Shown one piece after another: positions 20,671-41,620 of a stretch of DNA of 64,000 nt. The stretch is from Macrostomum lignano (lineage: Eukaryota): the NCBI GenBank assembly GCA_002269645.1, contig NIVC01000064.1:186001-250000 (forward strand). The letters are read 5' to 3'. The notes under the pieces were generated by a model that ran no database searches, had not been told where the DNA came from, and saw only the letters and a program-made list of their open reading frames with translations. The position numbers were made by a program, and so were the translations under genes. Position 1 is the first letter of the stretch. Each line of letters starts with the position of its first letter.

Positions 20671-21758
20671 TTCATGGGTGCCTTCGTCGCCGCGCTCGGA
20701 GACCAGCGCGAGGCGGAGTATTTCGACATCAGCACCACCTTAGAGCCGCTGCGGAGCAGACGGTCCCGCTGATGCGGCCAGCGCAGAAATTTCGCTGCCT
20801 GTCTGGCAGAGCGACCCAACCATCAGGCAGGCGCGGCTCAACATCGAGCGACTCCGCAGAAACCGGCGGCCCACAGGCGACGCTGAAGACGCGTTTGAGC
20901 GCCTTCTAGACGAGCGGCAGCAGGCCGCTGTCGACGACGCCGTCAGGTTCAGCACTGCAGCCGGCCCCGACGTGAAGAGCCGCGCAGTGTGGACGGCCGT
21001 CAGGACTCTGACGGGGCGCAAAAAGCGCGTGGCGCTGAACCTGACTGGCGACACCCCGGAGGAGCGCAGGAATGAATTGCGCGACTTCTTCGTCGGCATC
21101 GTGAACGCGCCCGCGTCGCCGCTGCCTTCCAGTTTTGCGCTCCCACTGGACACGCCGCTCCCACCTGACGTGCCGCGGCGCAGATGGGCAGACGACCAAG
21201 CTCGCACGCTGCCTACGTTCACCTACCTCGGCGGTCTGGTGCCCCACGTGGAAGAGGACCTCCGGCGGCGCAGAGGACTTGCCTGGGCGGCCTTTCGTTC
21301 GATCCGAGCCGTCCTCCAGTCTGAAGCGCTGCCCGACCGCCAGAGGGCTCGGCTGTGGCAGGCGGTGGTCGAAACCGTTCTGCTTTACAACGCCGAGACG
21401 TGGATGCTGACGGCTACGCTAGAGCGGCAGCTGGACTCGGCGCACTCACGGCTGCTCCGCGTGGCCTTTCGAGCTGACGAGAGCGTCGGGACTGAGGCCC
21501 TATACGATCGGACCAAGCTGCAGCGCCCGTCCACCATCCTGCGCCGGCGGCGACTTCAACTGGCGGGCCACGTGATCCGGGCCGAGGGCTACTGCCCCCA
21601 ACCTGTTCAGGACGTCCTGCTGTGCGACGCTGGGCCGCCCGACACTGCCAACGGAGCGGACTTTGTTCGCTCCCAGGCTCTGCGGCGCCCCATCTGACGC
21701 GCCCTGCTCTAACTGTGACCTTTTGCTTGCAGGGCCGCGTATTTTGTTGTTGTTGTTG
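20671..21758 (+). mobile_element. RTE-clade LINE derivative, 5'-truncated and lacking the RT core
   Basis: ORF 20972-21697 has thumb/C-terminal motifs (FTYLGG, AWAAF, VETVLLYNAETW, RRRRLQLAGHVIR) but no YADD; (TTG)n tail; 10-bp TSD TTGGTCGCAA at 20661-20670 and 21759-21768. Confidence 0.85.
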
Positions 21759-22300: not shown

Positions 22301-25300
22301 CTAGGCGCTAGTGTCTTCGTTGTCAGAGTTGCAGATGCTGCCAATAGTTCTGTTGGCGTCAACGATAGCAATATCGCCTCCGGATTGTCTAACAAAGATC
22401 TTGGCATTCTTGTTGATGCTGCACTTGCCCAGGTAGCGGACTTGAATTAATTTGCCCTTCAGATGCGAGTTGCATAGATCGCCCGCTTCCTATTAGAAGG
22501 CATATGTTCGCAGATTATTTGCTTTGAAAAATTTTGTTAGAATGCATAAATGACCTGTTACATGGGGCACTCGTCCTGAAGTTAAATAATTTGCTTTAAA
22601 TTTGAGAAAAATTCCTGTCTAAATGTGAGTACATGCATTTGCCCTGAGCGCAGGGCGCTTAGCCAGCACTTTTCAGAGAGACAATTAACGGCGCCAGCAC
22701 CAGGGGCTTTAGCACCAGGGGCTTTAGCACCAGGGCCTTTAGTACCAGTGGCTTTAGCACCAATGGCTTTAGCACCAGGGGCTTTAGCACTAGGGGCTTT
22801 AGCACCAATGGCTTTAGCACCAGGGGTCTTAGCACCAGGGGTCTTAGCACCAGGGGCTTTAGCACCAGGGGCTTTAGCACCAGGGGCTTTAGCAACAGGA
22901 GCGCCAGCACCAGTGGCTTTAGCACCAGGGGCTTTAGCACCAGGGGCTTTAGCACCAGGGGCTTTAGCACCAGGGGCTTTAGCACCAGGGGCTTTAGCAC
23001 CAGGGGCTTTAGCACCAGGGGCTTTAGCACCAGGGGCTTTAGCACCAGGGGCTTTAGCACCAGGGGCTTTAGCACCAGGGGCTTTAGCACCAGGGGCTTT
23101 AGCACCAGGGGCTTTAGCACCAGGGGCTTTAGCACCAGGGGCTTTAGCACCAGGGGCTTTAGCACCAGGGGCTTTAGCACCAGGGGCTTTAGCACCAGGG
23201 GCTTTAGCACCAGGGGCTTTAGCACCAGGGGCTTTAGCACCAGGGGCTTTAGCACCAGGGGCTTTAGCACCAGGGGCTTTAGCACCAGGGGCTTTAGCAC
23301 CAGGGGCTTTAGCACCAGGGGCTTTAGCACCAGGGGCTTTAGCACCAGGGGCTTTAGCACCAGGGGCTTTAGCACCAGGGGCTTTAGCACCAGGGGCTTT
23401 AGCACCAGGGGCTTTAGCACCAGGGGCTTTAGCACCAGGGGCTTTAGCACCAGGGGCTTTAGCACCAGGGGCTTTAGCACCAGGGGCTTTAGCACCAGGG
23501 GCTTTAGCACCAGGGGCTTTAGCACCAGGGGCGCCAGCACCAGGGGCGCCAGCACCAGGGGCGCCAGCACCAGGGGCGCCAGCACCAGGGGCGCCAGCAC
23601 CAGGGGCGCCAGCACCAGGGGCGCCAGCACCAGGGGCGCCAGCACCAGGGGCGCCAGCACCAGGGGCGCCAGCACCAGGGGCGCCAGCACCAGGGGCGCC
23701 AGCACCAGGGGCGCCAGCACCAGGGGCGCCAGCACCAGGGGCGCCAGCACCAGGGGCGCCAGCACCAGGGGCGCCAGCACCAGGGGCGCCAGCACCAGGG
23801 GCGCCAGCACCAGGGGCGCCAGCACCAGGGGCGCCAGCACCAGGGGCGCCAGCACCAGGGGCGCCAGCACCAGGGGCGCCAGCACCAGGGGCGCCAGCAC
23901 CAGGGGCGCCAGCACCAGGGGCGCCAGCACCAGGGGCGCCAGCACCAGGGGCGCCAGCACCAGGGGCGCCAGCACCAGGGGCGCCAGCACCAGGGGCGCC
24001 AAAGCTTGCTACAAGCTTGCTGCTGGACTTTTCCTAGCTAGTGATTGGTGGAGCGATGGGCACTATTTGCTTCCCAGTTCCCAATTACGCCGCTCTTGCC
24101 TGAATTGTAGCAACTGTCTAAAAATAGATAGACGTGGCCCACTACCCGCTTAACCCCCGGAAATGTTGATTCCCCGGAAATTAAACAGCACTCACCTCTT
24201 CACCGCAGTGATGCAAGTAGGAATTATTCATAAATCGAACTTCGTTGTCGCCAGAAATGCGGATGTACACACCGTCGGGCTTGGCGACGAGCACCTCGGC
24301 CAGGTATGCGTGGCCCAGTTTAAAGCGTACATTTTTTGCATTCTTGATCCGTCGTCTCTCTCTGAGCTGATGAATGACCCACCTGCTCAACAGCTGCAAG
24401 AATCCAAGGACAATGCCGATGCCCAGTAGGACAAATAGGCCGCACAGGTACTCGAATCCCAGAGGCACCTTGTTCTCAATGTCCGTCTGTCCGGAGTAGC
24501 AGCGATTCAAATCGAAATACTTCGAGCGCAGCTGAGCAAAATCGACGTCTTTGCGCGTTTTTAACTGATTAGTCAACTCCGCTTCGAACCGGAACCCTTT
24601 TCGATAGAACCAAGTCAGAAAGTGGCTGTTGGCGATGTTGCCCATGACGGTCAACTTGCAGTCTTTATTCTTTACGTAGCTCAACGTATCGGCGCTGGCA
24701 ATCAGAATGAAAGTTGGATCGGCCAGCACCTTAGCAACGGCTTCTTCGGTGCTGTTCAGGTACATCTCGTCAGGCCACTCTCGCACGGCCCTGGCGTGCA
24801 CCTTTGGCCAGTAGGTCTGCACTTCGGTGTCCACTAGCGAGTCTCTGATGTAGCCCCACTTGTAGCCCTTGCTATCGGCCAGGTCGCCTACAGAGGCGAA
24901 GAAAACGTGCCCCTCTGGCTTGATAAGAAAGGCTACCAGGTTGCTCAGGTAGGTTGTCATGTACAGCAGAGTGGAAAACCAGAGTAGCAGGGTGAAGAGT
25001 CGGCTGGACAGCTTCTTCGGCTCGGTCTCCACCTTGGACATAAGAAACGAGGACAGGACTAGGAAGAAGGATTCGTACGGCGAGTACATTCGCTGGTTCT
25101 CCGTGTTCGGGCTGATCTTGTCGCATGCGTACAGAGTGGCCGAGAGCAGTACAATTGCGATTACTATGCTCACCCAGACGTAGAACGAGAACGGATGAAA
25201 CACGTGCAGAAAGTCGGTGGAATGAACCACCTTTCTTCTGAGCATCTGAATGCCCTCCTGAACCATGTCAACCGAGAGATCGACGTGATCGACTCGATCG

Positions 25301-28300
25301 AACGTTGGCGACAGAAAATTCAGGCTAACATCGGCGGACTAAAACGAGAGATACATGTACGTTGAACAATTTTGAAAAGATTTTTAGGCTGCAAAAATGT
25401 TTCTTAAACAGGTTCGTGTAAAATTATAACACCTTACCCCGTTTTTAACCATTTCGAACACTTCGTTCTGGCTTTTGACAGGTATCAATTTGTACTCGAA
25501 GCCCAGATGAAGCCGCATCGCCTCCACAATCTCAATGCAGAGTCCTCGAGCAGTTTTTGTAGCGCTGTTGTAGCTGTAGAAGTACGGCTCGGTCTGGATA
25601 GTTTTCGACGATGGATTCCAGGGTTAGGAGCTACATAAAAAGGTCCTAGATCCCAGATCCTGGATCCCAGATCCTAGATCCCAGATCCTAGATCCCAGAT
25701 CCTAGATCCCAGATCCTAGATCCCAGATCCTAGATCCCAGATCCTAGATCCCAGATCCTAGATCCCAGATCCTAGATCCCAGATCCTAGATCCCAGATCC
25801 TAGATCCCAGATCCTAGATCCCAGATCCTAGATCCCAGATCCTAGATCCCAGATCCTAGATCCCAGATCCTAGATCCCAGATCCTAGATCCCAGATCCTA
25901 GATCCCAGATCCTAGATCCCAGATCCTAGATCCCAGATCCTAGATCCCAGATCCTAGATCCCAGATCCTAGATCCTAGATCCCAGATCCTAGATCCCAGA
26001 TCCTAGATCCCAGATCCTAGATCCCAGATCCTAGATCCCAGATCCTAGATCCCAGATCCTAGATCCCAGATCCTAGATCCCAGATCCTAGATCCCAGATC
26101 CTAGATCCCAGATCCTAGATCCCAGATCCTAGATCCCAGATCCTAGATCCCAGATCCTAGATCCCAGATCCTAGATCCCAGATCCTAGATCCCAGATCCT
26201 AGATCCCAGATCCTAGATCCCAGATCCTAGATCCCAGATCCTAGATCCCAGATCCTAGATCCCAGATCCTAGATCCCAGATCCTAGATCCCAGATCCTAG
26301 ATCCCAGATCCTAGATCCCAGATCCTAGATCCCAGATCCTAGATCCCAGATCCTAGATCCCAGATCCTAGATCCCAGATCCTAGATCCCAGATCCTAGAT
26401 CCCAGATCCTAGATCCCAGATCCTAGATCCCAGATCCTAGATCCCAGATCCTAGATCCCAGATCCTAGATCCCAGATCCTAGATCCCAGATCCTAGATCC
26501 CAGATCCTAGATCCCAGATCCTAGATCCCAGATCCTAGATCCCAGATCCTAGATCCCAGATCCTAGATCCCAGGTTCCACTGTGGTTTTCAGGTTACCTC
26601 GTAAGCTGCAAAGACTATTAGGCTTCGCGATATTGCACCAGCTCCATTGTACTCTGGTCTGTATGGCGACAAACTGGTTCCATCGTTGATCCACTTTCCA
26701 GTCAAGCTAAAAATGTCGCTTTCTGGTTTGCTTCGGTTGCTGCGGAACACGTCAATTTGCACTTTTGAGCGCACGTGAGTGGACTCGTTGTACGTGAAGG
26801 GGCCAGTCAGAGGGAACACGATACTCGTCTCCTGTCAAATTAAAGTAAGTTTGAGGTTCAGCGTCATTAGGCTCTGATCTTATTTGGCCGGTTCCGGTTT
26901 GTCCGGTTCCAGTTTGTCCGGTTCCAGTTTGTCCGGTTCCGGTTTGTCCGGTTCCGGTTTGTCCGGTTCCGGTTTGTCCGGTTCCGGTTTGTCCGGTTCC
27001 GGTTTGTCCGGTTCCGGCTTGTCCAGTTTCCAGAGAATGTTAGTCGATTTCTAGTCATAAAAATATGGCGCCCTTTGAAGACAGAATTAGAAACTTTGGC
27101 CTGACTTGATCTTCAGGAGGTCTACTATATTTGACTGGCTGTAATTTGCCACAAATTGACTCCCCTGAACCCTAACCCTAAACCCTACTCTAACAATAAA
27201 CCAAACCAAACGCCAAACCCTAATCTAAACCTCAACTTTAACCCTAACCTAAAGCGCCGGCAGTTAATTTTTGGCAGTCAAATGTCACCGACAGTCAAAT
27301 GTCACTGACAGTCAAATGTCACAGACATTCAAATGTCACCGACAGTCAAATGTCACCGACAGTCAAATGGCACCGACAGTCAAATGTCACCGACAGTCAA
27401 ATGTCACCGACAGTCAAATGTCACCGACAGTCAAATGTCACCGACAGTCAAATAGCACCGACAGTCAAATGGCACTGACAGTCAAATGTCACCGACAGTC
27501 AAATGTCACCGACATTCAAATGGCACCGACAGTCAAATTTCACCAATCAGCATAAGCTGCCCTTACCGTGGCAATCGTCTCTGTCAAAGTGGCACTGGTG
27601 GCCAATCGGCTCCATCTGCTGAACGACTTCAAAAAATGATTCATGCAGTCCAACACAAACGGCTGCAGCATTTCGCTTTGCGAACATTTGTTGTGATCGG
27701 ATAGGCGGAACGCGTAAAACTCGACTTCGCTTCGATAGAATTTGGTAAGATAGCGCTCGCTGTCGAACTATGATGGGACATGGAATGGTGAATAATGGCA
27801 TCATGCAGGAATGTATTCAGGGCATTGGTTGTTAAATTAAGCAAGGCCTAGGTGTCACATCCTGCTGGGGGGGGGGCGTGGCCTAGAAGTCTAGCGCGGC
27901 CGATCTGAGGTGCCAGCGGCCCAAGTTTGCTGGGATAAACTGGAATCTCGGCTTGGCTCTGCTCGTGCAATTACCGGCCTTGAGGGCCAACCCCCCAAGG
28001 CACAGTGAAGTGTACATGCCAAACGATAAATAAAGTTAGTGCCGCTGTACACTCCCGTGTGAGTGTGCGCCTGTGCGTATGACTGCGTACGTATCCGCGC
28101 GCTTGTGTGCCTGCTCAGGGGAGTCGGCGGAATGGGCAGTAATGCCTCTCGCCGGTCGTGTGACAATGTCGCTCAAAGACCAACTCACTAACCGAATGTT
28201 GCTTTAACTCCAGGTCTTAAACGAATCCTTGCTCTAATTACAATAAGGTTAAATAGGTCATTAGTGCACCCGATGCTGCTGACCCAACTCAGTTTATCAA

Positions 28301-31300
28301 ACAAGTTATTCTTTTATCCCGGTAAAACGCCGAACAACCAGAAGGTACTCACCAGACTGGGAAGGAAAAAGTACTGTGACGATACGAAAATCCCCACTCT
28401 TGAAGCCTGAAAAAAAATTTCAGATCAGTTAATCAAAACGGACATAAAAATGCTAAGTATTGTCATACTGGCATCGGATTAGCTATCCTCAAACCTGAGT
28501 GAGAGCTCTCTCCATAAGCGGCAGATTGGGCTCGTCAAACAGCATAATCCAGCCCATACCGGATGACAGAGTGTTCGGGTTGTAACGGGCAAATAAATTG
28601 TAGATTTGCTCATCCGAACTATTCGCCCGGATGGTGTGAACGCTGAATACTCGTCTGTCAAAGTTCACCAGGAACTGGCTGCTGGCTGCGGGGAACACAG
28701 TGGGTGCTCTGATCTGACACAATCACAATAAACTGGTTAGCAAACAGCACCAGGGCCTTTAGTACCAGTGGCTTTAGCACCAATGGCTTTAGCACCAGGG
28801 GCTTTAGCACTAGGGGCTTTAGCACCAATGGCTTTAGCACCAGGGGCTTTAGCACTAGGGGCTTTAGCACCAATGGCTTTAGCACCAGGGGCTTTAGCAC
28901 CAGGGGCTTTAGCACCAGGGGCTTTAGCAACAGGAGCGCCAGCACCAGTGGCTTTAGCACCAGGGGCTTTAGCACCAGGGGCTTTAGCAACAGGAGCGCC
29001 AGCACCAGTGGCTTTAGCACCAGGGGCTTTAGCACCAGGGGCTTTAGCACCAGGGGCTTTAGCACCAGGGGCGCCAGCACCAGGGGCGCCAGCACCAGGG
29101 GCGCCAGCACCAGGGGCGCCAGCACCAGGGGCGCCAGCACCAGGGGCGCCAGCACCAGGGGCGCCAGCACCAGGGGCGCCAGCACCAGGGGCGCCAGCAC
29201 CAGGGGCGCCAGCACCAGGGGCTTTAGCACCAGGGGCTTTAGCACCAGGGGCGCCAGCACCAGGGGCGCCAGCACCAGGGGCGCCAGCACCAGGGGCTTT
29301 AGCACCAGGGGCGCCAGCACCAGGGGCTTTAGCACCAGGGGCGCCAGCACCAGGGGCTTTAGCACCAGGGGCGCCAGCACCAGGGGCTTTAGCACCAGGG
29401 GCGCCAGCACCAGGGGCGCCAGCACCAGGGGCGCCAGCACCAGGGGCGCCAGCACCAGGGGCGCCAGCACCAGGGGCGCCAGCACCAGGGGCGCCAGCAC
29501 CAGGGGCGCCAGCACCAGGGGCGCCAAAGCTTGCTACAAGCTTGCTGCTGGACTTTTCCTAGCTAGTGATTGGTGGAGCGATGGGCACTATTTGCTTCCC
29601 AGTTCCCAATTACGCTGCTCTTGCCTGAATTGTAGCAACTGTCTAAAAATAGATAGACGTGGCCCACTACCCGCTTAACCCCCGGAAATGTTGATTCCCC
29701 GGAAATTAAACAGCTCTCACCTCTTCACCGCAGTGATGCAAGTAGGAATTATTCATAAATCGAACTTCGTTGTCGCCAGAAATGCGGATGTACACACCGT
29801 CGGGCTTGGCGACGAGCACCTCGGCCAGGTATGCGTGGCCCAGTTTAAAGCGTACATTTTTTGCATTCTTGATCCGTCGTCTCTCTCTGAGCTGATGAAT
29901 GACCCACCTGCTCAACAGCTGCAAGAATCCAAGGACAATGCCGATGCCCAGTAGGACAAATAGGCCGCACAGGTACTCGAATCCCAGAGGCACCTTGTTC
30001 TCAATGTCCGTCTGTCCGGAGTAGCAGCGATTCAAATCGAAATACTTCGAGCGCAGCTGAGCAAATTCGACGTCTTTGCGCGTTTTTAACTGATTAGTCA
30101 ACTCCGCTTCGAATCGGAACCCTTTTCGATAGAACCAAGTCAGAAAGTGGCTGTTGGCTATGTTGCCCATCACGGTCAACTTGCAGTCTTTATTCTTTAC
30201 GTAGCTTAACGTATCGGCGCTGGCAATCAGAATGAAATTTGGATCGGCCAGCACCTTAGCAACGGCTTCTTCGGTGCTGTTCAGGTACATCTCGTCAGGC
30301 CACTCTCGCACGGCCCTGGCGTGCACTTTTGGCCAGTAGGTCTGCACTTCGGTGTCCACTAGCGAGTCTCTGATGTAGCCCCACTTGTAGCCCTTGCTAT
30401 CGGCCAGGTCGCCTACAGAGGCGAAGAAAACGTGCCCCTCTGGCTTGATAAGAAAGGCTACCAGGTTGCTCAGGTAGGTTGTCATGTACAGCAGAGTGGA
30501 AAACCAGAGTAGCAGGGTGAAGAGTCGGCTGGACAGCTTCTTCGGCTCGGTCTCCACCTTGGACATGAGAAACGAGGACAGGACTAGAAAGAAGGATTCG
30601 TACGGCGAGTACATTCGCTGGTTCTCCGTGTTCGGGCTGATCTTGTCGCATGCGTACAGAGTGGCCGATAGCAGTACAATTGCGATTACTATGCTCACCC
30701 AGACGTAGAACGAGAACGGATGAAACACGTGCAGAAAGTCGGTGGAATGAACCACCTTTCTTCTGAGCATCTGAATGCCCTCCTGAACCATGTCAACCGA
30801 GAGATCGACGTGATCGACTCGATCGAACGTTGGCGACAGAAAATTCAGGCTAACATCGGCGGACTAAAACGAGAGATACATGTACGTTGAACAATTTTGA
30901 AAAGATTTTTAGGCTGCAAAAATGTTTCTTAAACAGGTTCGTGTAAAATTATAACACCTTACCCCGTTTTTAACCATTTCGAACACTTCGTTCTGGCTTT
31001 TGACAGGTATCAATTTGTACTCGAAGCCCAGATGAAGCCGCATCGCCTCCACAATCTCAATGCAGAGTCCTCGAGCAGTTTTTGTAGCGCTGTTGTAGCT
31101 GTAGAAGTACGGCTCGGTCTGGATAGTTTTCGACGATGGATTCCAGGGTTAGGAGCTACATAAAAAGGTCCTAGATCCCAGATCCTGGATCCCAGATCCT
31201 AGATCCCAGATCCTAGATCCCAGATCCTAGATCCCAGATCCTAGATCCCAGATCCTAGATCCCAGATCCTGGATCCCAGATCCTAGATCCCAGATCCTAG

Positions 31301-34300
31301 ATCCCAGATCCTAGATCCCAGATCCCAGATCCTAGATCCCAGATCCTAGATCCCAGATCCTAGATCCCAGATCCTAGATCCCAGATCCTAGATCCCAGAT
31401 CCTAGATCCCAGATCCTAGATCCCAGATCCTAGATCCCAGATCCTAGATCCCAGATCCTAGATCCCAGATCCTGGATCCCAGATCCTAGATCCCAGATCC
31501 TAGATCCCAGATCCCAGATCCTAGATCCCAGATCCTAGATCCCAGATCCTAGATCCCAGATCCTAGATCCCAGATCCTAGATCCCAGATCCTAGATCCCA
31601 GATCCTAGATCCCAGATCCTAGATCCCAGATCCTAGATCCCAGATCCTAGATCCCAGATCCTAGATCCCAGATCCTAGATCCCAGATCCTAGATCCCAGA
31701 TCCTAGATCCCAGATCCTAGATCCCAGATCCTAGATCCCAGATCCTAGATCCCAGATCCTAGATCCCAGATCCTAGATCCCAGATCCTAGATCCCAGATC
31801 CTAGATCCCAGATCCTAGATCCCAGATCCTAGATCCCAGATCCTAGATCCCAGATCCTAGATCCCAGATCCTAGATCCCAGATCCTAGATCCCAGATCCT
31901 AGATCCCAGATCCTAGATCCCAGATCCTAGATCCCAGATCCTAGATCCCAGATCCTAGATCCCAGATCCTAGATCCCAGATCCTAGATCCCAGATCCTAG
32001 ATCCCAGATCCTAGATCCCAGATCCTAGATCCCAGATCCTAGATCCCAGATCCTAGATCCCAGATCCTAGATCCCAGATCCTAGATCCCAGATCCTAGAT
32101 CCCAGATCCTAGATCCCAGATCCTAGATCCCAGATCCTAGATCCCAGATCCTAGATCCCAGATCCTAGATCCCAGATCCTAGATCCCAGATCCTAGATCC
32201 CAGATCCTAGATCCCAGATCCTAGATCCCAGATCCTAGATCCCAGATCCTAGATCCCAGATCCTAGATCCCAGATCCTAGATCCCAGATCCTAGATCCCA
32301 GATCCTAGATCCCAGATCCTAGATCCCAGATCCTAGATCCCAGATCCTAGATCCCAGATCCTAGATCCCAGATCCTAGATCCCAGATCCTAGATCCCAGA
32401 TCCTAGATCCCAGATCCTAGATCCCAGATCCTAGATCCCAGATCCTAGATCCCAGATCCTAGATCCCAGATCCTAGATCCCAGATCCTAGATCCCAGATC
32501 CTAGATCCCAGATCCTAGATCCCAGATCCTAGATCCCAGATCCTAGATCCCAGATCCTAGATCCCAGATCCTAGATCCCAGATCCTAGATCCCAGATCCT
32601 AGATCCCAGATCCTAGATCCCAGATCCTAGATCCCAGATCCTAGATCCCAGATCCTAGATCCCAGATCCTAGATCCCAGATCCTAGATCCCAGATCCTAG
32701 ATCCCAGATCCTAGATCCCAGATCCTAGATCCCAGATCCTAGATCCCAGATCCTAGATCCCAGATCCTAGATCCCAGATCCTAGATCCCAGATCCTAGAT
32801 CCCAGATCCTAGATCCCAGATCCTAGATCCCAGATCCTAGATCCCAGATCCTAGATCCCAGATCCTAGATCCCAGATCCTAGATCCCAGATCCTAGATCC
32901 CAGATCCTAGATCCCAGATCCTAGATCCCAGATCCTAGATCCCAGATCCTAGATCCCAGATCCTAGATCCCAGATCCTAGATCCCAGATCCTAGATCCCA
33001 GATCCTAGATCCCAGATCCTAGATCCCAGATCCTAGATCCCAGATCCTAGATCCCAGATCCTAGATCCCAGATCCTAGATCCCAGATCCTAGATCCCAGA
33101 TCCTAGATCCCAGATCCTAGATCCCAGATCCTAGATCCCAGATCCTAGATCCCAGATCCTAGATCCCAGATCCTAGATCCCAGATCCTAGATCCCAGATC
33201 CTAGATCCCAGATCCTAGATCCCAGATCCTAGATCCCAGATCCTAGATCCCAGATCCTAGATCCCAGATCCTAGATCCCAGATCCTAGATCCCAGATCCT
33301 AGATCCCAGATCCTAGATCCCAGATCCTAGATCCCAGATCCTAGATCCCAGATCCTAGATCCCAGATCCTAGATCCCAGATCCTAGATCCCAGATCCTAG
33401 ATCCCAGATCCTAGATCCCAGATCCTAGATCCCAGATCCTAGATCCCAGATCCTAGATCCCAGATCCTAGATCCCAGATCCTAGATCCCAGATCCTAGAT
33501 CCCAGATCCTAGATCCCAGATCCTAGATCCCAGATCCTAGATCCCAGATCCTAGATCCCAGATCCTAGATCCCAGATCCTAGATCCCAGATCCTAGATCC
33601 CAGATCCTAGATCCCAGATCCTAGATCCCAGATCCTAGATCCCAGATCCTAGATCCCAGATCCTAGATCCCAGATCCTAGATCCCAGATCCTAGATCCCA
33701 GATCCTAGATCCCAGATCCTAGATCCCAGATCCTAGATCCCAGATCCTAGATCCCAGATCCTAGATCCCAGATCCTAGATCCCAGATCCTAGATCCCAGA
33801 TCCTAGATCCCAGATCCTAGATCCCAGATCCTAGATCCCAGATCCTCCTAGATCCCAGATCCTAGATCCCAGATCCTAGATCCCAGATCCTAGATCCCAG
33901 ATCCTAGATCCCAGATCCTAGATCCCAGATCCTAGATCCCAGATCCTAGATCCCAGATCCTAGATCCCAGGTTCCACTGTGGTTTTCAGGTTACCTCGTA
34001 AGCTGCAAAGACTATTAGGCTTCGCGATATTGCACCAGCTCCATTGTACTCTGGTCTGTATGGCGACAAACTGGTTCCATCGTTGATCCACTTTCCAGTC
34101 AAGCTAAAAATGTCGCTTTCTGGTTTGCTTCGGTTGCTGCGGAACACGTCAATTTGCACTTTTGAGCGCACGTGAGTGGACTCGTTGTACGTGAAGGGGC
34201 CAGTCAGAGGGAACACGATACTCGTCTCCTGTCAAATTAAAGTAAGTTTGAGGTTCAGCGTCATTAGGCTCTGATCTTATTTGGCCGGTTCCGGTTTGTC

Positions 34301-37300
34301 CGGTTCCAGTTTGTCCGGTTCCGGTTTGTCCGGTTCCGGTTTGTCCGGTTCCGGTTTGTCCGGTTCCGGTTTGTCCGGTTCCGGTTTGTCCGGTTCCGGT
34401 TTGTCCGGTTCCGGCTTGTCCAGTTTCCAGAGAATGTTAGTCGATTTCTAGTCATAAAAATATGGCGTCCTTTGAAGACAGAATTAGAAACTTTGGCCTG
34501 ACTTGATCTTCAGGAGGTCTACTATATTTGACTGGCTGTAATTTGCCACAAATTGACTCCCCTGAACCCTAACCCTAAACCCTACTCTAACAATAAACCA
34601 AACCAAACGCCAAACCCTAATCTAAACCTCAACTTTAACCCTAACCTAAAGCGCCGGCAGTTAATTTTTGGCAGTCAAATGTCACCGACAGTCAAATGTC
34701 ACTGACAGTCAAATGTCACAGACATTCAAATGTCACCGACAGTCAAATGTCACCGACAGTCAAATGGCACCGACAGTCAAATGTCACCGACAGTCAAATG
34801 GCACCGACAGTCAAATGTCACCGACAGTCAAATGACACCGACAGTCAAATGTCACCGACAGTCAAATGTCACCCACAGTCAAATGGCACCGACAGTCAAA
34901 TGTCACCAATCTGCATAAGCTGCCCTTACCGTGGCAATCGTCTCTGTCAAAGTGGCACTGGTGGCCGATCGGCTCCATCTGCTGAACGACTTCAAAAAAT
35001 GATTCATGCAGTCCAACAGAAACGGCTGCAGCATTTCGCTTTGCGAATACTTGTTGTGATCGGATAGGCGGAACGCGTAAAACTCGACTTCGCTTCGATA
35101 GAATTTGGTAAGATAGCGCTCGCTGTCGAACTATGATGGGACATGGAATGGTGAATAATGGCATCATGCAGGAATGTATTCAGGGCATTGGTTGTTAAAT
35201 TAAGCAAGGCCTAGGTGTCACATCCTGCTGGGGGGGGGGGCGTGGCCTAGAAGTCTAGCGCGGCCGATCTGAGGTGCCAGCGGCCCAAGTTTGCTGGGAT
35301 AAACTGGAATCTCGGCTTGGCTCTGCTCGTGCAATTACCGGCCTTGAGGGCCAACCCCCCAAGACACAGTGAAGTGTACATGCCTAACGATAAATAAAGT
35401 TAGTGCCGCTGTACACTCCCGTGTGAGTGTGTGCCTGTGCGTATGACTGCGTACGTATCCGCGCGCTTGTGTGCCTGCTCAGGGGAGTCGGCGGAATGGG
35501 CAGTAATGCCTCTCGCCGGTCGTGTGACAATGTCGCTCAAAGACCAACTCACTAACCGAATGTTGCTTTAACTCCAGGTCTTAAACGAATCCTTGCTCTA
35601 ATTACAATAAGGTTAAATAGGTCATTAGTGCACCCGATGCTGCTGACCCAACTCAGTTTATCAAACAAGTTATTCTTTTATCCCGGTAAAACGCCGAACA
35701 ACCAGAAGGTACTCACCAGACTGGGAAGGAAAAAGTACTGTGACGATACGAAAATCCCCACTCTTGAAGCCTGAAAAAAAATTTCAGATCAGTTAATCAA
35801 AACGGACATAAAAATGCTAAGTATTGTCATACTGGCATCGGATTAGCTATCCTCAAACCTGAGTGAGAGCTCTCTCCATAAGCGGCAGATTGGGCTCGTC
35901 AAACAGCATAATCCAGCCCATACCGGATGACAGAGTGTTCGGGTTGTAACGGGCAAATAAATTGTAGATTTGCTCATCCGAACTATTCGCCCGGATGGTG
36001 TGAACGCTGAATACTCGTCTGTCAAAGTTCACCAGGAACTGGCTGCTGGCTGCGGGGAACAAAGTGGGTGCTCTGATCTGTTTATTACGCATGGAGGAAA
36101 AGAACAACTTAGGAGTGCTACTTAAGGAGCGGGATATTTTTGTTTTAAGTCTCACTGTAAAGATAACAAGAACTACTGTGTTAGTTGTACCATTGACCTT
36201 CTGTCACAGACAATCACAATAGACTGTCGTTTTTTCGGGAAACTTCATGAATCAAGAATAGAATAGTCTATGGTTTTAAGTGGGAGGGGGCTGCAAGAAG
36301 TTCAATGATCGAATTCTATAATTAGTATCGTCTATGACGATCTAAATGGCAATTTGGACAAATCAAAACGGGACGCAAGCCAGACATTCAAGCCAGGCTG
36401 CTTGAGAATACACGACCATAGAATGTGGAATGTACAATCGAAATGAGTAAAAGCCATTCAAAACGGGAAATCTCCAAAAGTCAGTGGAAACACGACTTCT
36501 AGTGTCTATGGCAGAAAACTCCCATCAATTCCTCCACAAGCCAGTAGGAGAGATGGAAGAATCTTCACTTTTTTTGCTTTGCTTTTGCTTCAGCGCGTGT
36601 CTATGGCAAATACCTCTCACCCCTACGGGGCTCTATGGAAGTGTGTAAGCCTTCCTTGTAACTGAAGGCTGTAATTAAATCAGATTAGCACTTCATCTTT
36701 ATTCCTTCCTCCCGATCCATTGTTTTTCATTGATTCTGCGCTTTTGTCTATGGCCCAAACTTTATTATACAACAGGACAACGCCAAAACCTACAATCAGC
36801 TGATTAAAGGTAAAAAACAATGGCAAAAGTTGCTTTGAAAGTGGCTTTTACCTGGAGTACCATCGGACACGGCCACCAGAGAAGTTCTCTTGTAAACCAA
36901 AGAAACCGAGTAGAGAGCTTCGCTTAGGTGATAATTGTCTATTTGAATCTCAAATATATTTGGCGTGCCTGGCGGAAAGCTGAACACATTTTTCTTAATA
37001 ATAAAGTAAGGAATTTCCATTGAGTAGGAGGCGATAGCCAGGCTGATGTAGTAATCAGATAGCACAGCTGCCGCACCGACCATGGTGAGGTTCTGTTGAA
37101 CTGTGCGGATTGGAAGATCAGGTTAAAATCAATAAAATTCTATGCACATGCTAACATCATTGTTTACGTTCCGTCTCTCCTAGTCGCTGTCACTCTCTAC
37201 TGTCACTCCCTGATAATCCCCGACTGTCACTCCATGATAATCCCCGACTGTCACTCCATGATAATCCCCGACTGTCACTCCATGATAATCCCCGACTGTC

Positions 37301-38340
37301 ACTCCATGATAATCCCCGACTGTCACTCCATGATAACCCCAGACTGTCACTCCATGATAATCCCCGACTGTCACTCCCTGATAATCCCCGACTGTCACTC
37401 CATGATAATCCCCGACTGTCACTCCCTGATAATCCCCGACTGTCACTCCATGATAATCCCCGACTGTCCCTCCATGACAATCCCCGACTGTCACTCCATG
37501 ATAATCCCCGACTGTCACTCCATGATAATCCCCGACTGTCACTCCATGATAACCCCAGACTGTCACTCCATGATAATCCCCGACTGTCACTCCATGATAA
37601 TCCCCGACTGTCATTCCATGATAATCCCCGACTGTCACTCCCTGATAATCCCCGACTGTCACTCCATGATAATCCCCGACTGTCACTCCATGACAATCCC
37701 TGACTGTCACTCCATGACAATCCACGACTGTCACTCCATTATATCCGCAACTGTCACTTCAATACACTGTATATCTGCAATTATCACTCGGCCATTATTT
37801 CCAAAATTATCACTCCATTACATCCCAAATTGTCACTCCATTGTATCATAAATTGTCACTCCATTATATCCGCCAATTGTCACTCCATTACATCCCGAAT
37901 TGTCACTCCATTACATCCCAAATTGTCACTCCATTACATCCCCAATTGTCACTCCATTTCATCTCCAATTGTCACTCCAATATATACCAAATTGTCACTC
38001 CATTATTTCCCCCAATTTTCAATTCATTTCATCCCCAATTGTCACTCATTTATATCCCCCGACTGTCACTCGATGTCAATCGCCAGTGCCACCCCATGTT
38101 TCTCTCTTTCACCTCGTTGCGCATTTAATTTAAGCCAGCTTTCACAAAAGCGATATCACATTCAACATGCAGACTCACCAGTTTCTGCGTGGGAGGCATC
38201 TTCAAACAGGCCTCTGATTGGCAGATAAGTGAAGTTAAGCGATATGCCAGTAGTCAAGACATAGGGAAAAAGTGTCCTATAAAGGTTTCGCTGAGTTTCC
38301 AGAGATTTCACGGCGGAGAAGACATCGTAATCTTCAATAG
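22301..38340 (-). CDS. Divergent ionotropic glutamate receptor-like gene. Exons: 38179-38340, 36852-37100, 36191-36267 (contains a TGA; alternative is extending the next exon to 36154), block B [35859-36077, 35717-35770, 34930-35130, 33995-34228, 30963-31118, 29721-30863], block A [28495-28713, 28353-28406, 27567-27767, 26598-26831, 25438-25593, 24196-25338], terminal exon 22301-22489. First (signal) exon not found.
   Basis: ATD-like exons, LBD S1 (EPYF..GLCIEIV; SADVSLNFLSPTFDRVDHVDLS), M1-M4 with M3 TTYLSNLVAF, and S2 cysteines. All listed junctions are GT-AG and phase-compatible. Confidence 0.85.
22690..24001. repeat. 15-bp satellite (GGGGCTTTAGCACCA, then GGGGCGCCAGCACCA), about 87 units, in the last iGluR intron
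   Basis: Period 15; sharp switch of variant at about 23531; lies between donor 24195 and acceptor 22490. Confidence 0.97.
25644..26573. repeat. 14-bp satellite (CCAGATCCTAGATC), about 66 units, intronic, copy A
   Basis: Period 14, a dimer of the 7-mers CCAGATC and CTAGATC. Confidence 0.97.
26887..27027. repeat. 15-bp array (GGTTCCGGTTTGTCC)n; second copy at about 34284-34424
   Basis: Direct reading. Confidence 0.9.
27167..27545. repeat. Degenerate CCCTAA-rich tract followed by a 17-bp minisatellite (GTCACCGACAGTCAAAT); second copy at about 34560-34910
   Basis: Direct reading; period 17. Confidence 0.85.
28746..29526. repeat. 15-bp satellite, copy B, about 52 units with interleaved variants
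   Basis: Same two unit variants as 22690-24001, in a different order. Confidence 0.97.
31169..33970. repeat. 14-bp satellite (CCAGATCCTAGATC), about 200 units, intronic, copy B
   Basis: Period 14, nearly homogeneous. Confidence 0.97.
37195..38090. repeat. 24-bp minisatellite (ATAATCCCCGACTGTCACTCCATG), about 22 units to about 37740, then a degenerate extension; iGluR intron
   Basis: Direct reading. Confidence 0.93.
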
Positions 38341-38471: not shown

Positions 38472-39012
38472 ATATCCAACATCATGGATAAATGCAGTTA
38501 GAATTTGGATTGCTAATCTATCCAACATCATGGATAAATGCAGTTAGAATTTGGATTGCTAATCTATCCAACATCACAGATAAATGCAATTAGAATTTGG
38601 ATTGCTAATCTATCCAACATCATGGATTAATGAAATTAGAATTTGGATTGCTAATCTATCCAACATCATGGATAAATGCAATTAGAATTTGGATTGCTAA
38701 TCTATTCAACATCACGGATAAATGCAATTAGAATTTGGATTGCTAATCTATCCAACAACATGGATAAATGCAATTAGAATTTGGATTGCTAATCTATCCA
38801 ACATCATGGATAAATGCAGTTAGAATTTGGATTGCTAATCTATCCAACATCATGGATTAATGAAATTAGAATTTGGATTGCTAATCTATCCAACATCATG
38901 GATTAATGAAATTAGAATTTGGATTGCTAATCTATCCAACAACATGGATAAATGCAATTAGAATTTGGATTGCTAATCTATCCAACATCATGGATAAATG
39001 CAGTTAGAATTT
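38472..39012. repeat. 46-bp minisatellite, about 12 units
   Basis: Unit CTATCCAACATCATGGATAAATGCAGTTAGAATTTGGATTGCTAAT. Confidence 0.95.
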
Positions 39013-39419: not shown

Positions 39420-41608
39420 GTAGACACAACAATCACCTGTAAGACACAACCATCAATTCTTAGACACAATCATAACCTGTCAGCATCACCTGTTAGACAC
39501 AATCATCACCTGTCAGCATCACCTGTTAGACACAATCATCACCTGTCAGCATCACCTGTTAGACACAATCATCACCTGTCAGCATCACCTGTTAGACACA
39601 ATCATCACCTGTCAGCATCACCTGTTAGACACAATCATCACCTGTCAGACACAGTCATCACCTGTTAGACACAATCATCACCTGTTAGACACAAGCATCA
39701 CCTGTTAGACAAAATCATCACCTGTTAGACACAGTCATCACCTGTTAGACACAACCATCACCTGTTAGACACAAGCATCACCTGTTAGACAAAATCATCA
39801 CCTGTTAGACACAGTCATCACCTGTTAGACACAACCATCACCTGTTAGACACAAGCATCACCTGTTAGACAAAATCATCACCTGTTAGACACAGTCATCA
39901 CCTGTTAGACACAACCATCACCTGTTAGACACAGTCATCACCTGTTAGACAAAATCATCACCTGTTAGACAAAATCATCACCTGTTAGACAAAATCATCA
40001 CCTGTTAGACACAGTCATCACCTGTTAGACACAATCATCACCTGTTAGACACAAGCATCACCTGTTAGACAAAATCATCACCTGTTAGACACAGTCATCA
40101 CCTGTTAGACACAACCATCACCTGTTAGACACAAGCATCACCTGTTAGACAAAATCATCACCTGTTAGACACAATCATCACCTGTTAGACACAACCATCA
40201 CCTGTTAGACACAAGCATCACCTGTTAGACACAATCATCACCTGTTAGACATAATCATCACATGTTAGACACAATCTCACCTGTCAGACACAATCATCAC
40301 CTGTTAGACATAATCATCACCTGTTAGACATAATCATCACCTGTTAGACATAATCATCACCTGTTAGACACAAGCATCACCTGTTAGACACAAGCATCAC
40401 CTGTTAGACACAATCATCACCTGTTAGACATAATCATCACCTGTTAGACATAATCATCACCTGTTAGACACAATCTCACCTGTTAGACACAAGAATCACC
40501 TGTTAGACACAGTCATCACCTGTCAGACACAATTATCACCTGTCAGACACAGTCATCACCTGTCAGACACAGTCATCACCTGTTAGACACAGTCATCACC
40601 TGTTAGACACAGTCATCACCTGTTAGATACAGTCATCACCTGTTAGACACAGTCATCACCTGTTAGATACAGTCATCACCTGTTAGACACAATCATCACC
40701 TGTTAGACACAGTCATCACCTGTTAGACACAATCATCACCTGTTAGACACAGTCATCACCTGTTAGACACAACCATCACCTGTTAGACATAATCATCACC
40801 TGTCAGACACAGTCATCACCTGTTGGACGCAGTCATCACCTGTTAGACACAGTCATCACCTGTTAGATACAGTCATCACCTGTTAGACACAGTCATCACC
40901 TGTTAGATACAGTCATCACCTGTTAGACACAATCATCACCTGTTAGACACAGTCATCACCTGTTAGATACAGTCATCACCTGTTAGACACAGTCATCACC
41001 TGTTAGATACAGTCATCACCTGTTAGACACAATCATCACCTGTTAGACACAGTCATCACCTGTTAGACACAACCATCACCTGTTAGACATAATCATCACC
41101 TGTTAGACACAATCATCACCTGTTAGACACAATCATCACCTGTTAGACACAATCATCACCTGTTAGACATAATCATCACCTGTTAGACATAATCATCACC
41201 TGTTAGACATAATCATCACCTGTTAGACATAATCATCACCTGTTAGACACAATCATCACCTGTTAGACACAATCATCACCTGTTAGACATAATCATCACC
41301 TGTTAGACATAATCATCACCTGTTAGACACAATCATCACCTGTTAGACACAATCATCACCTGTTAGACACAATCATCACCTGTTAGACACAATCATCACC
41401 TGTTAGACACAATCATCACCTGTTAGACATAATCATCACCTGATAGACATAATCATCACCTGTTAGACACAATCCTCACCTGTTAGACATAATCATCACC
41501 TGTTAGACATAATCATCACCTGTTAGACATAATCATCACCTGTTAGACACAGTCATCACCTGTTAGACACAGTCATCACCTGTTGGACGCAGTCATCACC
41601 TGTCAGAC
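39420..41608. repeat. 20-bp minisatellite (CATCACCTGTTAGACACAAT), about 105 units
   Basis: Direct reading; starts with a short 33-bp (20+13) variant stretch. Confidence 0.97.
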
Positions 41609-41620
41609 AACCTAGTCAGT

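What the first reader, a model, noticed from the sequence alone, without database searches (positions are those of the whole stretch)
22301..24324. iGluR-like channel with an S1/OB-fold-like domain in its cytoplasmic tail, completed by a hidden exon
Seen: the apparent ORF end (..CGEE-VSAV*) contains a strong donor GAG|GTGAGT at 24195. Across the 15-bp satellite, an acceptor (TTCTAAC branch-like site, TTCTAATAG| at 22490) opens an in-phase 62-codon exon. The joined tail after M4 reads FKLGHAYLAEVLVAKPDGVYIRISGDNEVRFMNNSYLHHCGEE|EAGDLCNSHLKGKLIQVRYLGKCSINKNAKIFVRQ. This fits the G-x2-Y-x3-V-x6-G-x-[FY]-[IV]-x-I-x-G ... S-x-L ... G-x3-4-V-x2-L spacing of S1 domains (ribosomal protein S1/PNPase type), including the last two strands supplied by the hidden exon. 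Established: iGluR C-tails are normally unstructured. I know of no iGluR-S1 fusion, but I could not search for one. Inference: a ligand-gated channel that may bind RNA or use an OB fold as a cytoplasmic interaction module.
Basis: partly seen in the sequence, partly recalled or inferred. Interest (0 to 1): 0.82.

Follow-up and report, generated by a model that had tools for sequence, protein, structure and literature searches.

The report
Glutamate-receptor channel with S1-domain tail
A glutamate-receptor-type ion channel gene of the flatworm Macrostomum lignano carries, directly after its last membrane helix, a folded S1/OB domain derived from the RNA-degrading enzyme PNPase; the "hidden" last exon is real and already in GenBank, but the domain has not been annotated there.

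Summary
The sequence observation holds exactly: donor GAG|GTGAGT (last exon base 24196), acceptor TAATAG| (exon 22489-22304, stop 22303-22301), phase 0, 62 codons.

The window is Macrostomum lignano contig NIVC01000064.1. The exon is not hidden. It is the last CDS exon of GenBank model BOX15_Mlig005955g1 (PAA92080.1), whose annotation was built from RNA-seq. That model joins the exon to the donor of a 98%-identical tandem copy (29721), not to 24196.

A paralogue with 38% identity (Mlig009170) has the same tail, split by a phase-0 intron at the homologous position.

A profile of the two tails matches the S1 domain of human mitochondrial PNPase (PNPT1) at E = 4e-7. The paralogue's tail is 42% identical to it. 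Both halves contribute to the score: 13.6 bits from the large exon and 17.7 bits from the terminal exon.

AlphaFold gives b1-b2-b3-helix-b4-b5 at moderate confidence, and the top Foldseek hits are S1 domains.

Pfam S1 does not detect the window's own tail and is below threshold for the paralogue, which may explain why the domain is unannotated.

So the S1/OB reading is supported, and the source is narrowed to PNPase. RNA binding is untested. This is a new variant of a known family, of moderate to high interest.

The parts
22301..22489 (-). Terminal coding exon: 62 codons at 22489-22304, then stop TAG at 22303-22301. It encodes the helix, b4 and b5 of the S1-like domain, plus a C-terminal extension of about 27 aa predicted to be disordered.
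   Evidence: exact match to the last exon of PAA92080.1; homologous to the paralogue's last exon; H56-63, E67-75 and E83-87 all lie after the junction at residue 53; 17.7 bits against PNPT1 S1.
22490..24195 (-). Phase-0 intron between copy A's donor GT at 24195 and the acceptor AG at 22490. It holds a 15-bp satellite at 22696-23997 and a TTCTAAC branch-like site at 22542-22536.
   Evidence: The paralogue has an intron at the homologous position and phase, also filled with a repeat.
24196..24324 (-). N-terminal half of the S1-like domain (FKLGHAYLAEVLVAKPDGVYIRISGDNEVRFMNNSYLHHCGEE; strands b1-b3). It is encoded in the same exon as M4.
   Evidence: 13.6 bits against PNPT1 S1.
24325..24375 (-). 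Basic juxtamembrane linker IHQLRERRRIKNAKNVR, between M4 and the S1-like domain.
   Evidence: Its positive charge fits a cytoplasmic location.
24376..24450 (-). M4 transmembrane helix (YLCGLFVLLGIGIVLGFLQLLSRWV).
   Evidence: Aligned to M4 of GluK1; coordinates.
24196..25338 (-). Large exon of tandem copy A. It encodes the end of ligand-binding lobe S1, M1 (25191-25123), the pore loop (25071-25033), M3 (24999-24925), lobe S2, M4, the linker and the first half of the S1-like domain.
25438..28685 (-). The other five exons of copy A: 28685-28495, 28406-28353, 27767-27567, 26831-26598 and 25593-25438. All are intact with GT-AG borders. Each intron is filled with its own satellite.
29721..36049 (-). 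Tandem copy B of the same six exons: 36049-35859, 35770-35717, 35130-34930, 34228-33995, 31118-30963 and 30863-29721. This is the copy used in the GenBank CDS. Its donor at 29721 is joined to 22489 across a 7231-nt intron that contains all of copy A.
   Evidence: exact mapping of PAA92080.1; 14 nt differences from copy A.
36852..38335 (-). Unique 5' exons of the annotated model, 38335-38179 and 37100-36852. They encode part of the amino-terminal domain. The model is 5'-partial: it has no start codon or signal peptide.

Best explanation
The locus is the Macrostomum lignano gene BOX15_Mlig005955g1. It encodes a divergent, kainate-like ionotropic glutamate receptor subunit.

The cytoplasmic tail is not disordered. 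After M4 and a 17-residue basic linker comes a complete S1-type OB-fold domain that descends from the C-terminal S1 domain of polynucleotide phosphorylase (PNPT1). A phase-0 intron splits the domain. Strands b1-b3 are encoded in the same exon as M4. The helix, b4 and b5 are encoded by the terminal exon 22489-22304.

The fusion predates the split from a paralogue family with 38% identity (Mlig009170/Mlig000643), which has the same tail and the same intron.

Shown here: the gene structure, homology to a solved S1 domain, the predicted fold, and conservation between paralogues.

Inferred mechanism: a tetrameric receptor would hang four basic S1 modules (pI about 9-10) just under the membrane. These would act as a binding platform for single-stranded RNA, ribonucleoprotein or another polyanionic partner. 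They would take the place of the linear-motif tails that other iGluRs use for anchoring and trafficking. I put the structural and evolutionary part at about 0.85. I put RNA as the actual ligand at about 0.35.
For: Identity of the gene:
- Window 12301-48335 is 100% identical to NIVC01000064.1.
- PAA92080.1 maps exactly onto nine GT-AG exons that end at 22489-22304.
- The GenBank annotation of this assembly was built from RNA-seq by StringTie, TACO and TBONE, not ab initio (PMC5730564).

iGluR body:
- Lig_chan E = 3e-19 and 1.2e-18 for the full model.
- GluK1-3 are the best solved matches; alignments end at M4.

S1 tail:
- The two-tail profile hits PNPT1 S1 (9kjt_A residues 627-704) at E = 3.8e-7.
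- The paralogue's tail alone hits it at E = 2.5e-7, with 42% identity.
- The paralogue's tail gives sub-threshold Pfam hits: S1 at E = 0.0015 and S1_2 at E = 0.014.
- The two tails are 33% identical (E = 3e-11), close to the 38% for the whole proteins.
- The intron position and phase are conserved.
- Both halves score against PNPT1 S1: 13.6 and 17.7 bits separately, 37.0 bits for the whole tail.
- AlphaFold2 predicts the OB topology and Foldseek's top hits are S1 domains.
- The domain cores are basic, pI 8.9 and 9.9.
- All eight models of the paralogue family, from two assemblies, end with the same tail.
Against: - The window's own tail gives no Pfam S1 hit and no PDB hit on its own. Its link to S1 runs through the paralogue.
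- Its pairwise match to PNPT1 is weak: 21% identity, E = 0.001.
- The structure model has moderate confidence and rests on a two-sequence alignment. Foldseek E-values are all at or above 0.03.
- A profile of the terminal exon alone does not retrieve PNPT1 from the PDB.
- No relatives of the tail were found outside M. lignano, so deep conservation is unproven.
- From memory of E. coli PNPase S1 (not tested here), most canonical RNA-contact residues (two Phe, His, Asp, Arg) are replaced. Only an aromatic (Tyr/Trp) on b2 and a basic residue on b5 remain.
- I saw no reads, expression pattern or protein data.
Confidence: 0.75

Rival explanations
1. The domain has an S1 fold but has lost nucleic-acid binding. 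It serves instead as a protein-protein or protein-lipid interaction module, for example for clustering, trafficking or assembly of the receptor.
For: The fold and homology evidence is the same as for the main explanation. The window's tail is very divergent from PNPT1 (21% identity). By my recollection, most canonical S1 RNA-contact residues are substituted. The window's tail has gained 4 Cys and 5 His that the paralogue lacks, which suggests a changed surface.
Against: The cores remain basic (pI 8.9-9.9). An aromatic is kept at the b2 position (GVYI in the window's tail, GVWV in the paralogue). No partner is known.
Confidence: 0.35
2. The reader's specific junction 24196->22489 is not used. 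Copy A would then be a silent recent duplicate or an assembly artefact, and only copy B (29721->22489) makes the S1-tailed protein.
For: The GenBank CDS carries the copy-B variants (ADPNFIL, KDVEFAQ) and joins 29721 to 22489. Copy A has no 5' exons of its own. The assembly is known to be highly redundant.
Against: All six copy-A exons and their splice sites are intact. Differences from copy B are 9 synonymous and 5 non-synonymous. 24196 is the donor nearest to the terminal exon. The last ~350 nt of the two donor exons are identical, so short reads cannot assign the junction. Either choice gives the same tail.
Confidence: 0.35
3. The tail is a decaying relic of an accidental exon capture and has no function.
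For: No homologues were found outside the species. The window's tail is weakly S1-like.
Against: The tail is conserved between paralogues almost as well as the channel itself (33% against 38%). The reading frame, intron position and phase are kept in both families and in all recent copies.
Confidence: 0.1
4. The tail is not an OB/S1 domain at all. It would be disordered, or SH3- or Tudor-like, and the motif spacing would be coincidental.
For: Pfam S1 misses the window's tail. Single-sequence AlphaFold2 was uninformative (pLDDT 32.5).
Against: The profile hit to a solved S1 domain is significant (E = 3.8e-7). The predicted topology is b1-b2-b3-helix-b4-b5. Foldseek's best matches are S1 domains, with no SH3 or Tudor folds among them.
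Confidence: 0.05

Closest known systems
Kainate-type ionotropic glutamate receptors (GluK1-GluK3) and the wider AMPA/kainate/delta group
   Same: The layout is the same: amino-terminal domain, two-lobed ligand-binding domain, M1, pore loop, M3 and M4. Lig_chan, Lig_chan-Glu_bd and SBP_bac_3 are all detected. GluK1-3 are the best solved matches at E ~1e-22. The ligand-binding Arg is conserved, and the M3 motif reads TYLSNLVAFL where GluK1 has SYTANLAAFL.
   Different: Known iGluR tails are short or disordered and work through linear motifs; this one is a folded S1/OB domain. By alignment, the acidic residue that holds the ligand's amino group (Glu of LLMESTSIEYV) is Ser/Ala here, so the agonist may not be glutamate. 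Overall the protein is very divergent.
S1 domain of polynucleotide phosphorylase (human PNPT1, PDB 9kjt/9njb; E. coli PNPase S1, 1sro)
   Same: This is sequence homology, not just a shared fold. The profile E-value is 3.8e-7. The paralogue's tail is 42% identical over 69 aa, including IQV[KQR]Y[FL]G[KR]D. The predicted OB topology matches, and 1sro is among the Foldseek hits.
   Different: There are no RNase PH or KH domains. The domain is tethered to a membrane channel rather than to an exoribonuclease ring. Pfam S1 is below threshold. RNA binding is untested.
Channels that captured an enzyme-derived cytoplasmic domain, such as TRPM2 with its NUDT9-homology domain (analogy from general knowledge, not tested here)
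   Same: A folded domain from a soluble, mitochondria-associated enzyme family is fused to the cytoplasmic C-terminus of a tetrameric cation channel, where it could act as an intracellular ligand or partner sensor.
   Different: The channel family and the captured domain are both different. Nothing here shows that the S1 module affects gating.

Membership tests
Ionotropic glutamate receptor (iGluR) superfamily | Ligand-gated ion channel transmembrane module (Pfam PF00060) scoring above the gathering score | tested here: met
   69.7 bits against a cut-off of 30.8, E = 3e-19. The full model scores 67.7 bits.
Ionotropic glutamate receptor (iGluR) superfamily | Bilobed periplasmic-binding-protein-type ligand-binding domain interrupted by the channel | tested here: met
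   SBP_bac_3 scores 30.8 bits against a cut-off of 26.4 and spans residues 368-689, on both sides of M1-M3. Lig_chan-Glu_bd scores 28.5 bits, just under its cut-off of 30, in P0001 and 60.8 bits in the paralogue.
Ionotropic glutamate receptor (iGluR) superfamily | M1, pore loop, M3 and M4 colinear with solved receptors, which places the C-terminus in the cytoplasm | tested here: met
   A single alignment covers residues 292-735 of P0001 and 371-842 of GluK1 (7lvt_A), ending at M4. That the tail is cytoplasmic follows from established iGluR topology.
Ionotropic glutamate receptor (iGluR) superfamily | The amino-acid-binding triad (Arg, Thr/Ser, Asp/Glu) that marks glutamate- or glycine-gated members | tested here: inconclusive
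   Arg is kept (LSPTFDR against LTITYVR). The acidic residue aligns to Ser/Ala (LIASADTLSYV against LLMESTSIEYV). This rests on one pairwise alignment at low identity.
S1 RNA-binding domain (OB fold; Pfam PF00575) | A Pfam S1 score above the gathering score (22 bits) | tested here: not met
   The window's tail gives no hit even at E <= 10. The paralogue's tail scores 19.3 bits, E = 0.0015, plus S1_2 at E = 0.014. This is a detection criterion, not a structural feature.
S1 RNA-binding domain (OB fold; Pfam PF00575) | Significant sequence homology to a domain solved as S1 | tested here: met
   The two-tail profile matches the PNPT1 S1 domain at E = 3.8e-7. The paralogue alone matches at E = 2.5e-7, and the tails match each other at E = 3e-11. 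The window's tail alone reaches only pairwise E = 0.001.
S1 RNA-binding domain (OB fold; Pfam PF00575) | A five-stranded antiparallel beta-barrel with a helix between b3 and b4 | tested here: met
   AlphaFold2 gives E16-25, E28-33, E39-43, H56-63, E67-75 and E83-87, with core pLDDT about 77-83, mean 61.6 and pTM 0.55. Foldseek's top hits are S1 domains with probability 0.99-1.0, but E-values are 0.03 or higher. Confidence is moderate, because the alignment has only two sequences.
S1 RNA-binding domain (OB fold; Pfam PF00575) | Binding of single-stranded RNA | not testable with these tools
   The only indication is a basic pI of 8.9-9.9.
Polynucleotide phosphorylase (PNPase/PNPT1) | Two RNase PH domains and a KH domain N-terminal to the S1 domain | tested here: not met
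   Pfam finds only iGluR domains upstream of the tail. The protein is not a PNPase; only its S1 domain is PNPase-derived.

The most novel reading that the evidence does not exclude
A ligand-gated ion channel that directly binds RNA. The four PNPase-derived S1 domains under the pore would tether specific mRNAs or ribonucleoproteins to the receptor, coupling synaptic or chemosensory activation to local RNA localisation, translation or decay. Alternatively, they would let cytosolic RNA or oligonucleotides modulate gating. This would be a previously unknown kind of channel-RNA coupling that arose by exon capture in macrostomid flatworms.
Probability: 0.2. Interest if true: 0.85.

Novelty: new variant of a known kind. 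Interest (0 to 1): 0.58.

Why it matters
iGluR cytoplasmic tails are regarded as disordered regions that work through short motifs. A folded domain of a nucleic-acid-binding type, fused right after M4 and kept in two old paralogue families, would be a new way of wiring a ligand-gated channel to the cell interior.

It is also a clean example of domain capture. The donor (the PNPase S1 domain) can be identified, and the captured domain still carries a conserved internal intron.

The proteins are in GenBank and UniProt as hypothetical or generic iGluR-domain proteins with no S1 annotation, because Pfam S1 falls just below threshold. Four full-text literature searches found no description of such a fusion.

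M. lignano has transgenesis (PMC5730564), and I recall RNAi is also available. That would let tagging, CLIP and tail deletion test the idea directly.

Tried and rejected
- **Pfam on the joined tail and on the joined large exon plus tail:** no S1 hit at E <= 10.
- **PDB sequence search with the window's tail alone:** nothing relevant.
- **Word-indexed homology searches:** with the tail alone, no hit. With the two-tail alignment, no hit.
- **Exhaustive phmmer of the tail against 1.84 billion representatives:** only the gene's own models, plus spurious WD40 and other repeat-protein matches.
- **Metagenome scan with the tail alignment:** none of the 151 pattern matches was confirmed.
- **Single-sequence AlphaFold2:** pLDDT 32.5, unusable.
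- **Profile of the terminal exon alone against the PDB:** only insignificant kinase hits. The half-by-half scoring replaced this test.
- **ORF length as evidence for the exon:** rejected. Of 328 downstream AG sites, 132 open 40 or more codons in phase.
- **A second copy of the terminal exon behind copy B:** none. The exon is unique in the window. Behind copy B's satellite comes the first exon of copy A.
- **Chimeric gene model as an explanation:** rejected. Strands b1-b3 of the S1 domain lie in the same uninterrupted exon as M4, in both copies and in the paralogue.
- **Pfam on the reverse-transcriptase-looking ORF 20972-21697:** no hit.
- **Literature:** four searches; three looked for an iGluR-S1 or iGluR-OB fusion, none found.
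Full report
**Observation.** On the minus strand, the large exon ends ...CAC TGC GGT GAA GAG|GTGAGT, with the last exon base at 24196. Unspliced, it reads on to ...CGEEVSAV*. A 15-bp satellite of 86.8 copies occupies 22696-23997. TTCTAAC sits at 22542-22536. The acceptor CCTTCTAATAG| ends at 22490. The exon 22489-22304 encodes 62 codons and is followed by TAG. Donor and acceptor are both phase 0.

The open frame alone is weak evidence. Of 328 AG sites in the 6 kb downstream of the donor, 132 open at least 40 codons in phase.

**What the locus is.** A search with the joined protein returned PAA92080.1, [quoted passage not shown], at about 100% identity over the whole query, terminal exon included. 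Window 12301-48335 is 100% identical to contig NIVC01000064.1 of assembly GCA_002269645.1.

The deposited protein maps exactly onto nine GT-AG exons:
- 38335-38179
- 37100-36852
- 36049-35859
- 35770-35717
- 35130-34930
- 34228-33995
- 31118-30963
- 30863-29721
- 22489-22304

So the "hidden" exon is the annotated last exon. The GenBank annotation of this assembly came from a genome-guided RNA-seq transcriptome (StringTie, TACO, the de novo assembly and TBONE), not from ab initio prediction (PMC5730564). A precise in-frame GT-AG junction in that model therefore implies transcript support. I did not see reads myself.

**Tandem duplication.** The six exons from 36049 to 29721 (copy B) are repeated at 28685 to 24196 (copy A). 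The coding sequence differs at 14 of 1979 nt (9 synonymous, 5 non-synonymous). All splice sites are intact, and intron identity is about 98%. One breakpoint lies inside the 15-bp satellite. The terminal exon exists only once, behind copy A.

The last ~350 nt of the two donor exons are identical, so short reads cannot separate the two junctions, and the encoded tail is the same.

The block is 1979 nt long (remainder 2 on division by 3), so only one block per mRNA keeps the frame. Splicing 29721->28685 would give ...CGEE-PAASSW*.

**The channel.** Pfam finds Lig_chan (E = 3e-19), SBP_bac_3 and Lig_chan-Glu_bd. The best solved relatives are kainate receptors GluK1-3 at E ~1e-22. One alignment runs from the end of the amino-terminal domain to M4 and stops there. 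The 118 residues after M4 have no counterpart in any solved iGluR. Under established iGluR topology they are cytoplasmic, and the basic linker IHQLRERRRIKNAKNVR fits that location.

**The tail.** On its own, the window's tail gives nothing in four tests:
- Pfam
- the PDB sequence search
- the word-indexed protein search
- the exhaustive search of 1.84 billion representatives, which returned only the gene's own models plus spurious repeat proteins

The decisive lead was a paralogue, BOX15_Mlig009170g3 (PAA47537.1; 881 aa, 38% identical). It has the same kind of tail, and the two tails align at 33% identity, E = 3e-11. All eight models of that paralogue family, from two independent assemblies, end with this tail.

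In the paralogue's gene, the tail is split by a phase-0 intron (AAA|GTGAGT ... TTTCAG|ATC) exactly 13 residues before the conserved [KL]IQV motif, as in the window. That intron is also filled with a simple repeat. The two terminal exons are homologous at the same offset (E = 1e-4). The fusion and its intron therefore predate the divergence of the two gene families.

**Identity of the domain.**
- The paralogue's tail gives sub-threshold but specific Pfam hits: S1 at 19.3 bits against a cut-off of 22 (E = 0.0015), and S1_2 at E = 0.014.
- A profile of the two tails hits only one kind of solved protein significantly: the S1 domain of human mitochondrial PNPase (PNPT1; 9kjt_A residues 627-704) at E = 3.8e-7. 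The alignment runs from LEFG... to ...IQVKYFGRDPADGRMRL.
- The paralogue's tail alone gives E = 2.5e-7 and 42% identity over 69 residues by BLASTP. The window's tail gives 21% identity, E = 0.001.
- Scoring the halves separately against the PNPT1 S1 segment gives 13.6 bits for the half encoded by the large exon, 17.7 bits for the half encoded by the terminal exon, and 37.0 bits for the whole. The terminal exon therefore contributes at least as much as the first half, although alone it is too short to retrieve PNPT1 from the PDB.

**Fold.** Single-sequence AlphaFold2 was useless (pLDDT 32.5). With the two-tail alignment, the model reached pLDDT 61.6 and pTM 0.55, with 77-83 in the first three strands. 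The topology is b1 (16-25), b2 (28-33), b3 (39-43), helix (56-63), b4 (67-75), b5 (83-87). The exon junction falls after residue 53. The last ~25 residues are predicted to be disordered.

Foldseek E-values against the PDB are weak (0.03 or higher), but the hit list is dominated by S1 domains: human FLJ11067 S1, GSP13, RNase II, ribosomal bS1, YabR, eIF2alpha, DHX8 S1, Rrp4/Csl4-type proteins and E. coli PNPase S1 (1sro). No SH3 or Tudor folds appear among the leading hits.

**How it probably works.** Shown here: an iGluR subunit with a PNPase-derived S1/OB domain fused 17 residues after M4, retained in two old paralogue families. Inferred: a tetramer would present four basic S1 modules (core pI 8.9 and 9.9) at the inner face of the membrane. 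These would bind RNA, ribonucleoprotein or another polyanionic partner, or else a protein partner.

From memory of the E. coli PNPase S1 work (a lead, not a test), most canonical RNA-contact residues are replaced. An aromatic on b2 (Tyr/Trp) and a basic residue on b5 remain. I therefore give RNA binding about 0.35, a non-RNA interaction role about 0.35, and a functionless relic about 0.1.

**Comparison and novelty.** The protein is a member of the iGluR superfamily, with kainate receptors as the nearest solved relatives, though its ligand-binding acidic residue may be lost. Its tail is a divergent S1 domain homologous to the PNPase S1 domain. It is not a PNPase, since it has no RNase PH or KH domains.

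The proteins are deposited only as hypothetical or generic iGluR-domain proteins, and the precomputed Pfam lists carry no S1. Three targeted full-text searches found no report of an iGluR-S1 or iGluR-OB fusion.

**Verdict.** The exon itself is already annotated. The S1 architecture is a new variant of a known kind. Interest is about 0.58.

Noticed in passing
window 24196-28685 (copy A) and 29721-36049 (copy B), minus strand: A six-exon block of the gene is tandemly duplicated. Exons are 99.3% identical and introns about 98%. One breakpoint lies inside the 15-bp satellite. The block length (1979 nt, remainder 2 on division by 3) means only one block per mRNA keeps the frame; splicing 29721->28685 would give ...CGEE-PAASSW*. 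This could be a real recent duplication, mutually exclusive exon blocks, or an assembly artefact of a redundant genome.
   Followed up: partly
window 22696-23997, 25644-26573, 26883-27028, 27275-27544 and their copy-B counterparts 28791-29526, 31169-33970, 34280-34425, 34672-34907; also L001 14562-14952: Most introns in the duplicated block of this gene carry their own short-period satellite (14, 15 or 17 bp). Array lengths differ greatly between the two copies, for example 930 against 2802 bp. The paralogue's tail intron is likewise filled with a GTTA-type repeat.
   Followed up: no
window ~27150-27260 and ~34545-34650, minus strand: A degenerate telomere-like tract (TTAGGG / GGGTTTAGGG variants) lies inside an intron of both copies.
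   Followed up: no
window 24196-24210 and 22450-22489 (tail residues HHCGEE|EAGDLCNSH): The window's tail has 4 Cys and 5 His that the paralogue lacks. They include an HHC-x8-C-x2-H arrangement that spans the exon junction, in the loop and helix between b3 and b4. This may be a metal-binding site acquired after the paralogues split.
   Followed up: no
window ~24690-24720 (LIASADTLSYV), minus strand: By alignment to GluK1, the acidic residue that binds the agonist's amino group (Glu in LLMESTSIEYV) is Ser/Ala in this gene but Asp in the paralogue (YIDSATTINY). The ligand-binding Arg is kept. This subunit may not be gated by glutamate.
   Followed up: partly
P0004 = UniProt A0A1I8FCD9 (older M. 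lignano assembly): This is a frameshift-riddled model of the same locus that includes part of the terminal exon. UniProt names it 'OB_NTP_bind domain-containing protein', yet a Pfam scan at E <= 10 finds nothing in it. The origin of the name is unexplained.
   Followed up: partly
window 20972-21697 (+): A 241-aa ORF just downstream of the gene looks like the C-terminal part of a retrotransposon reverse transcriptase (..LYNAETWMLT..RLLRVAF..). It gave no Pfam hit at E <= 0.01.
   Followed up: partly
window 38335 and upstream, minus strand: The annotated model is 5'-partial. It starts at EDYDVF, just after a possible acceptor (ttttcag|ctatt), and has no start codon or signal peptide. The paralogue has about 40 more N-terminal residues, including a signal peptide. 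The true first exon was not located; large satellites lie upstream at 38473-39012 and 39422-41609.
   Followed up: no
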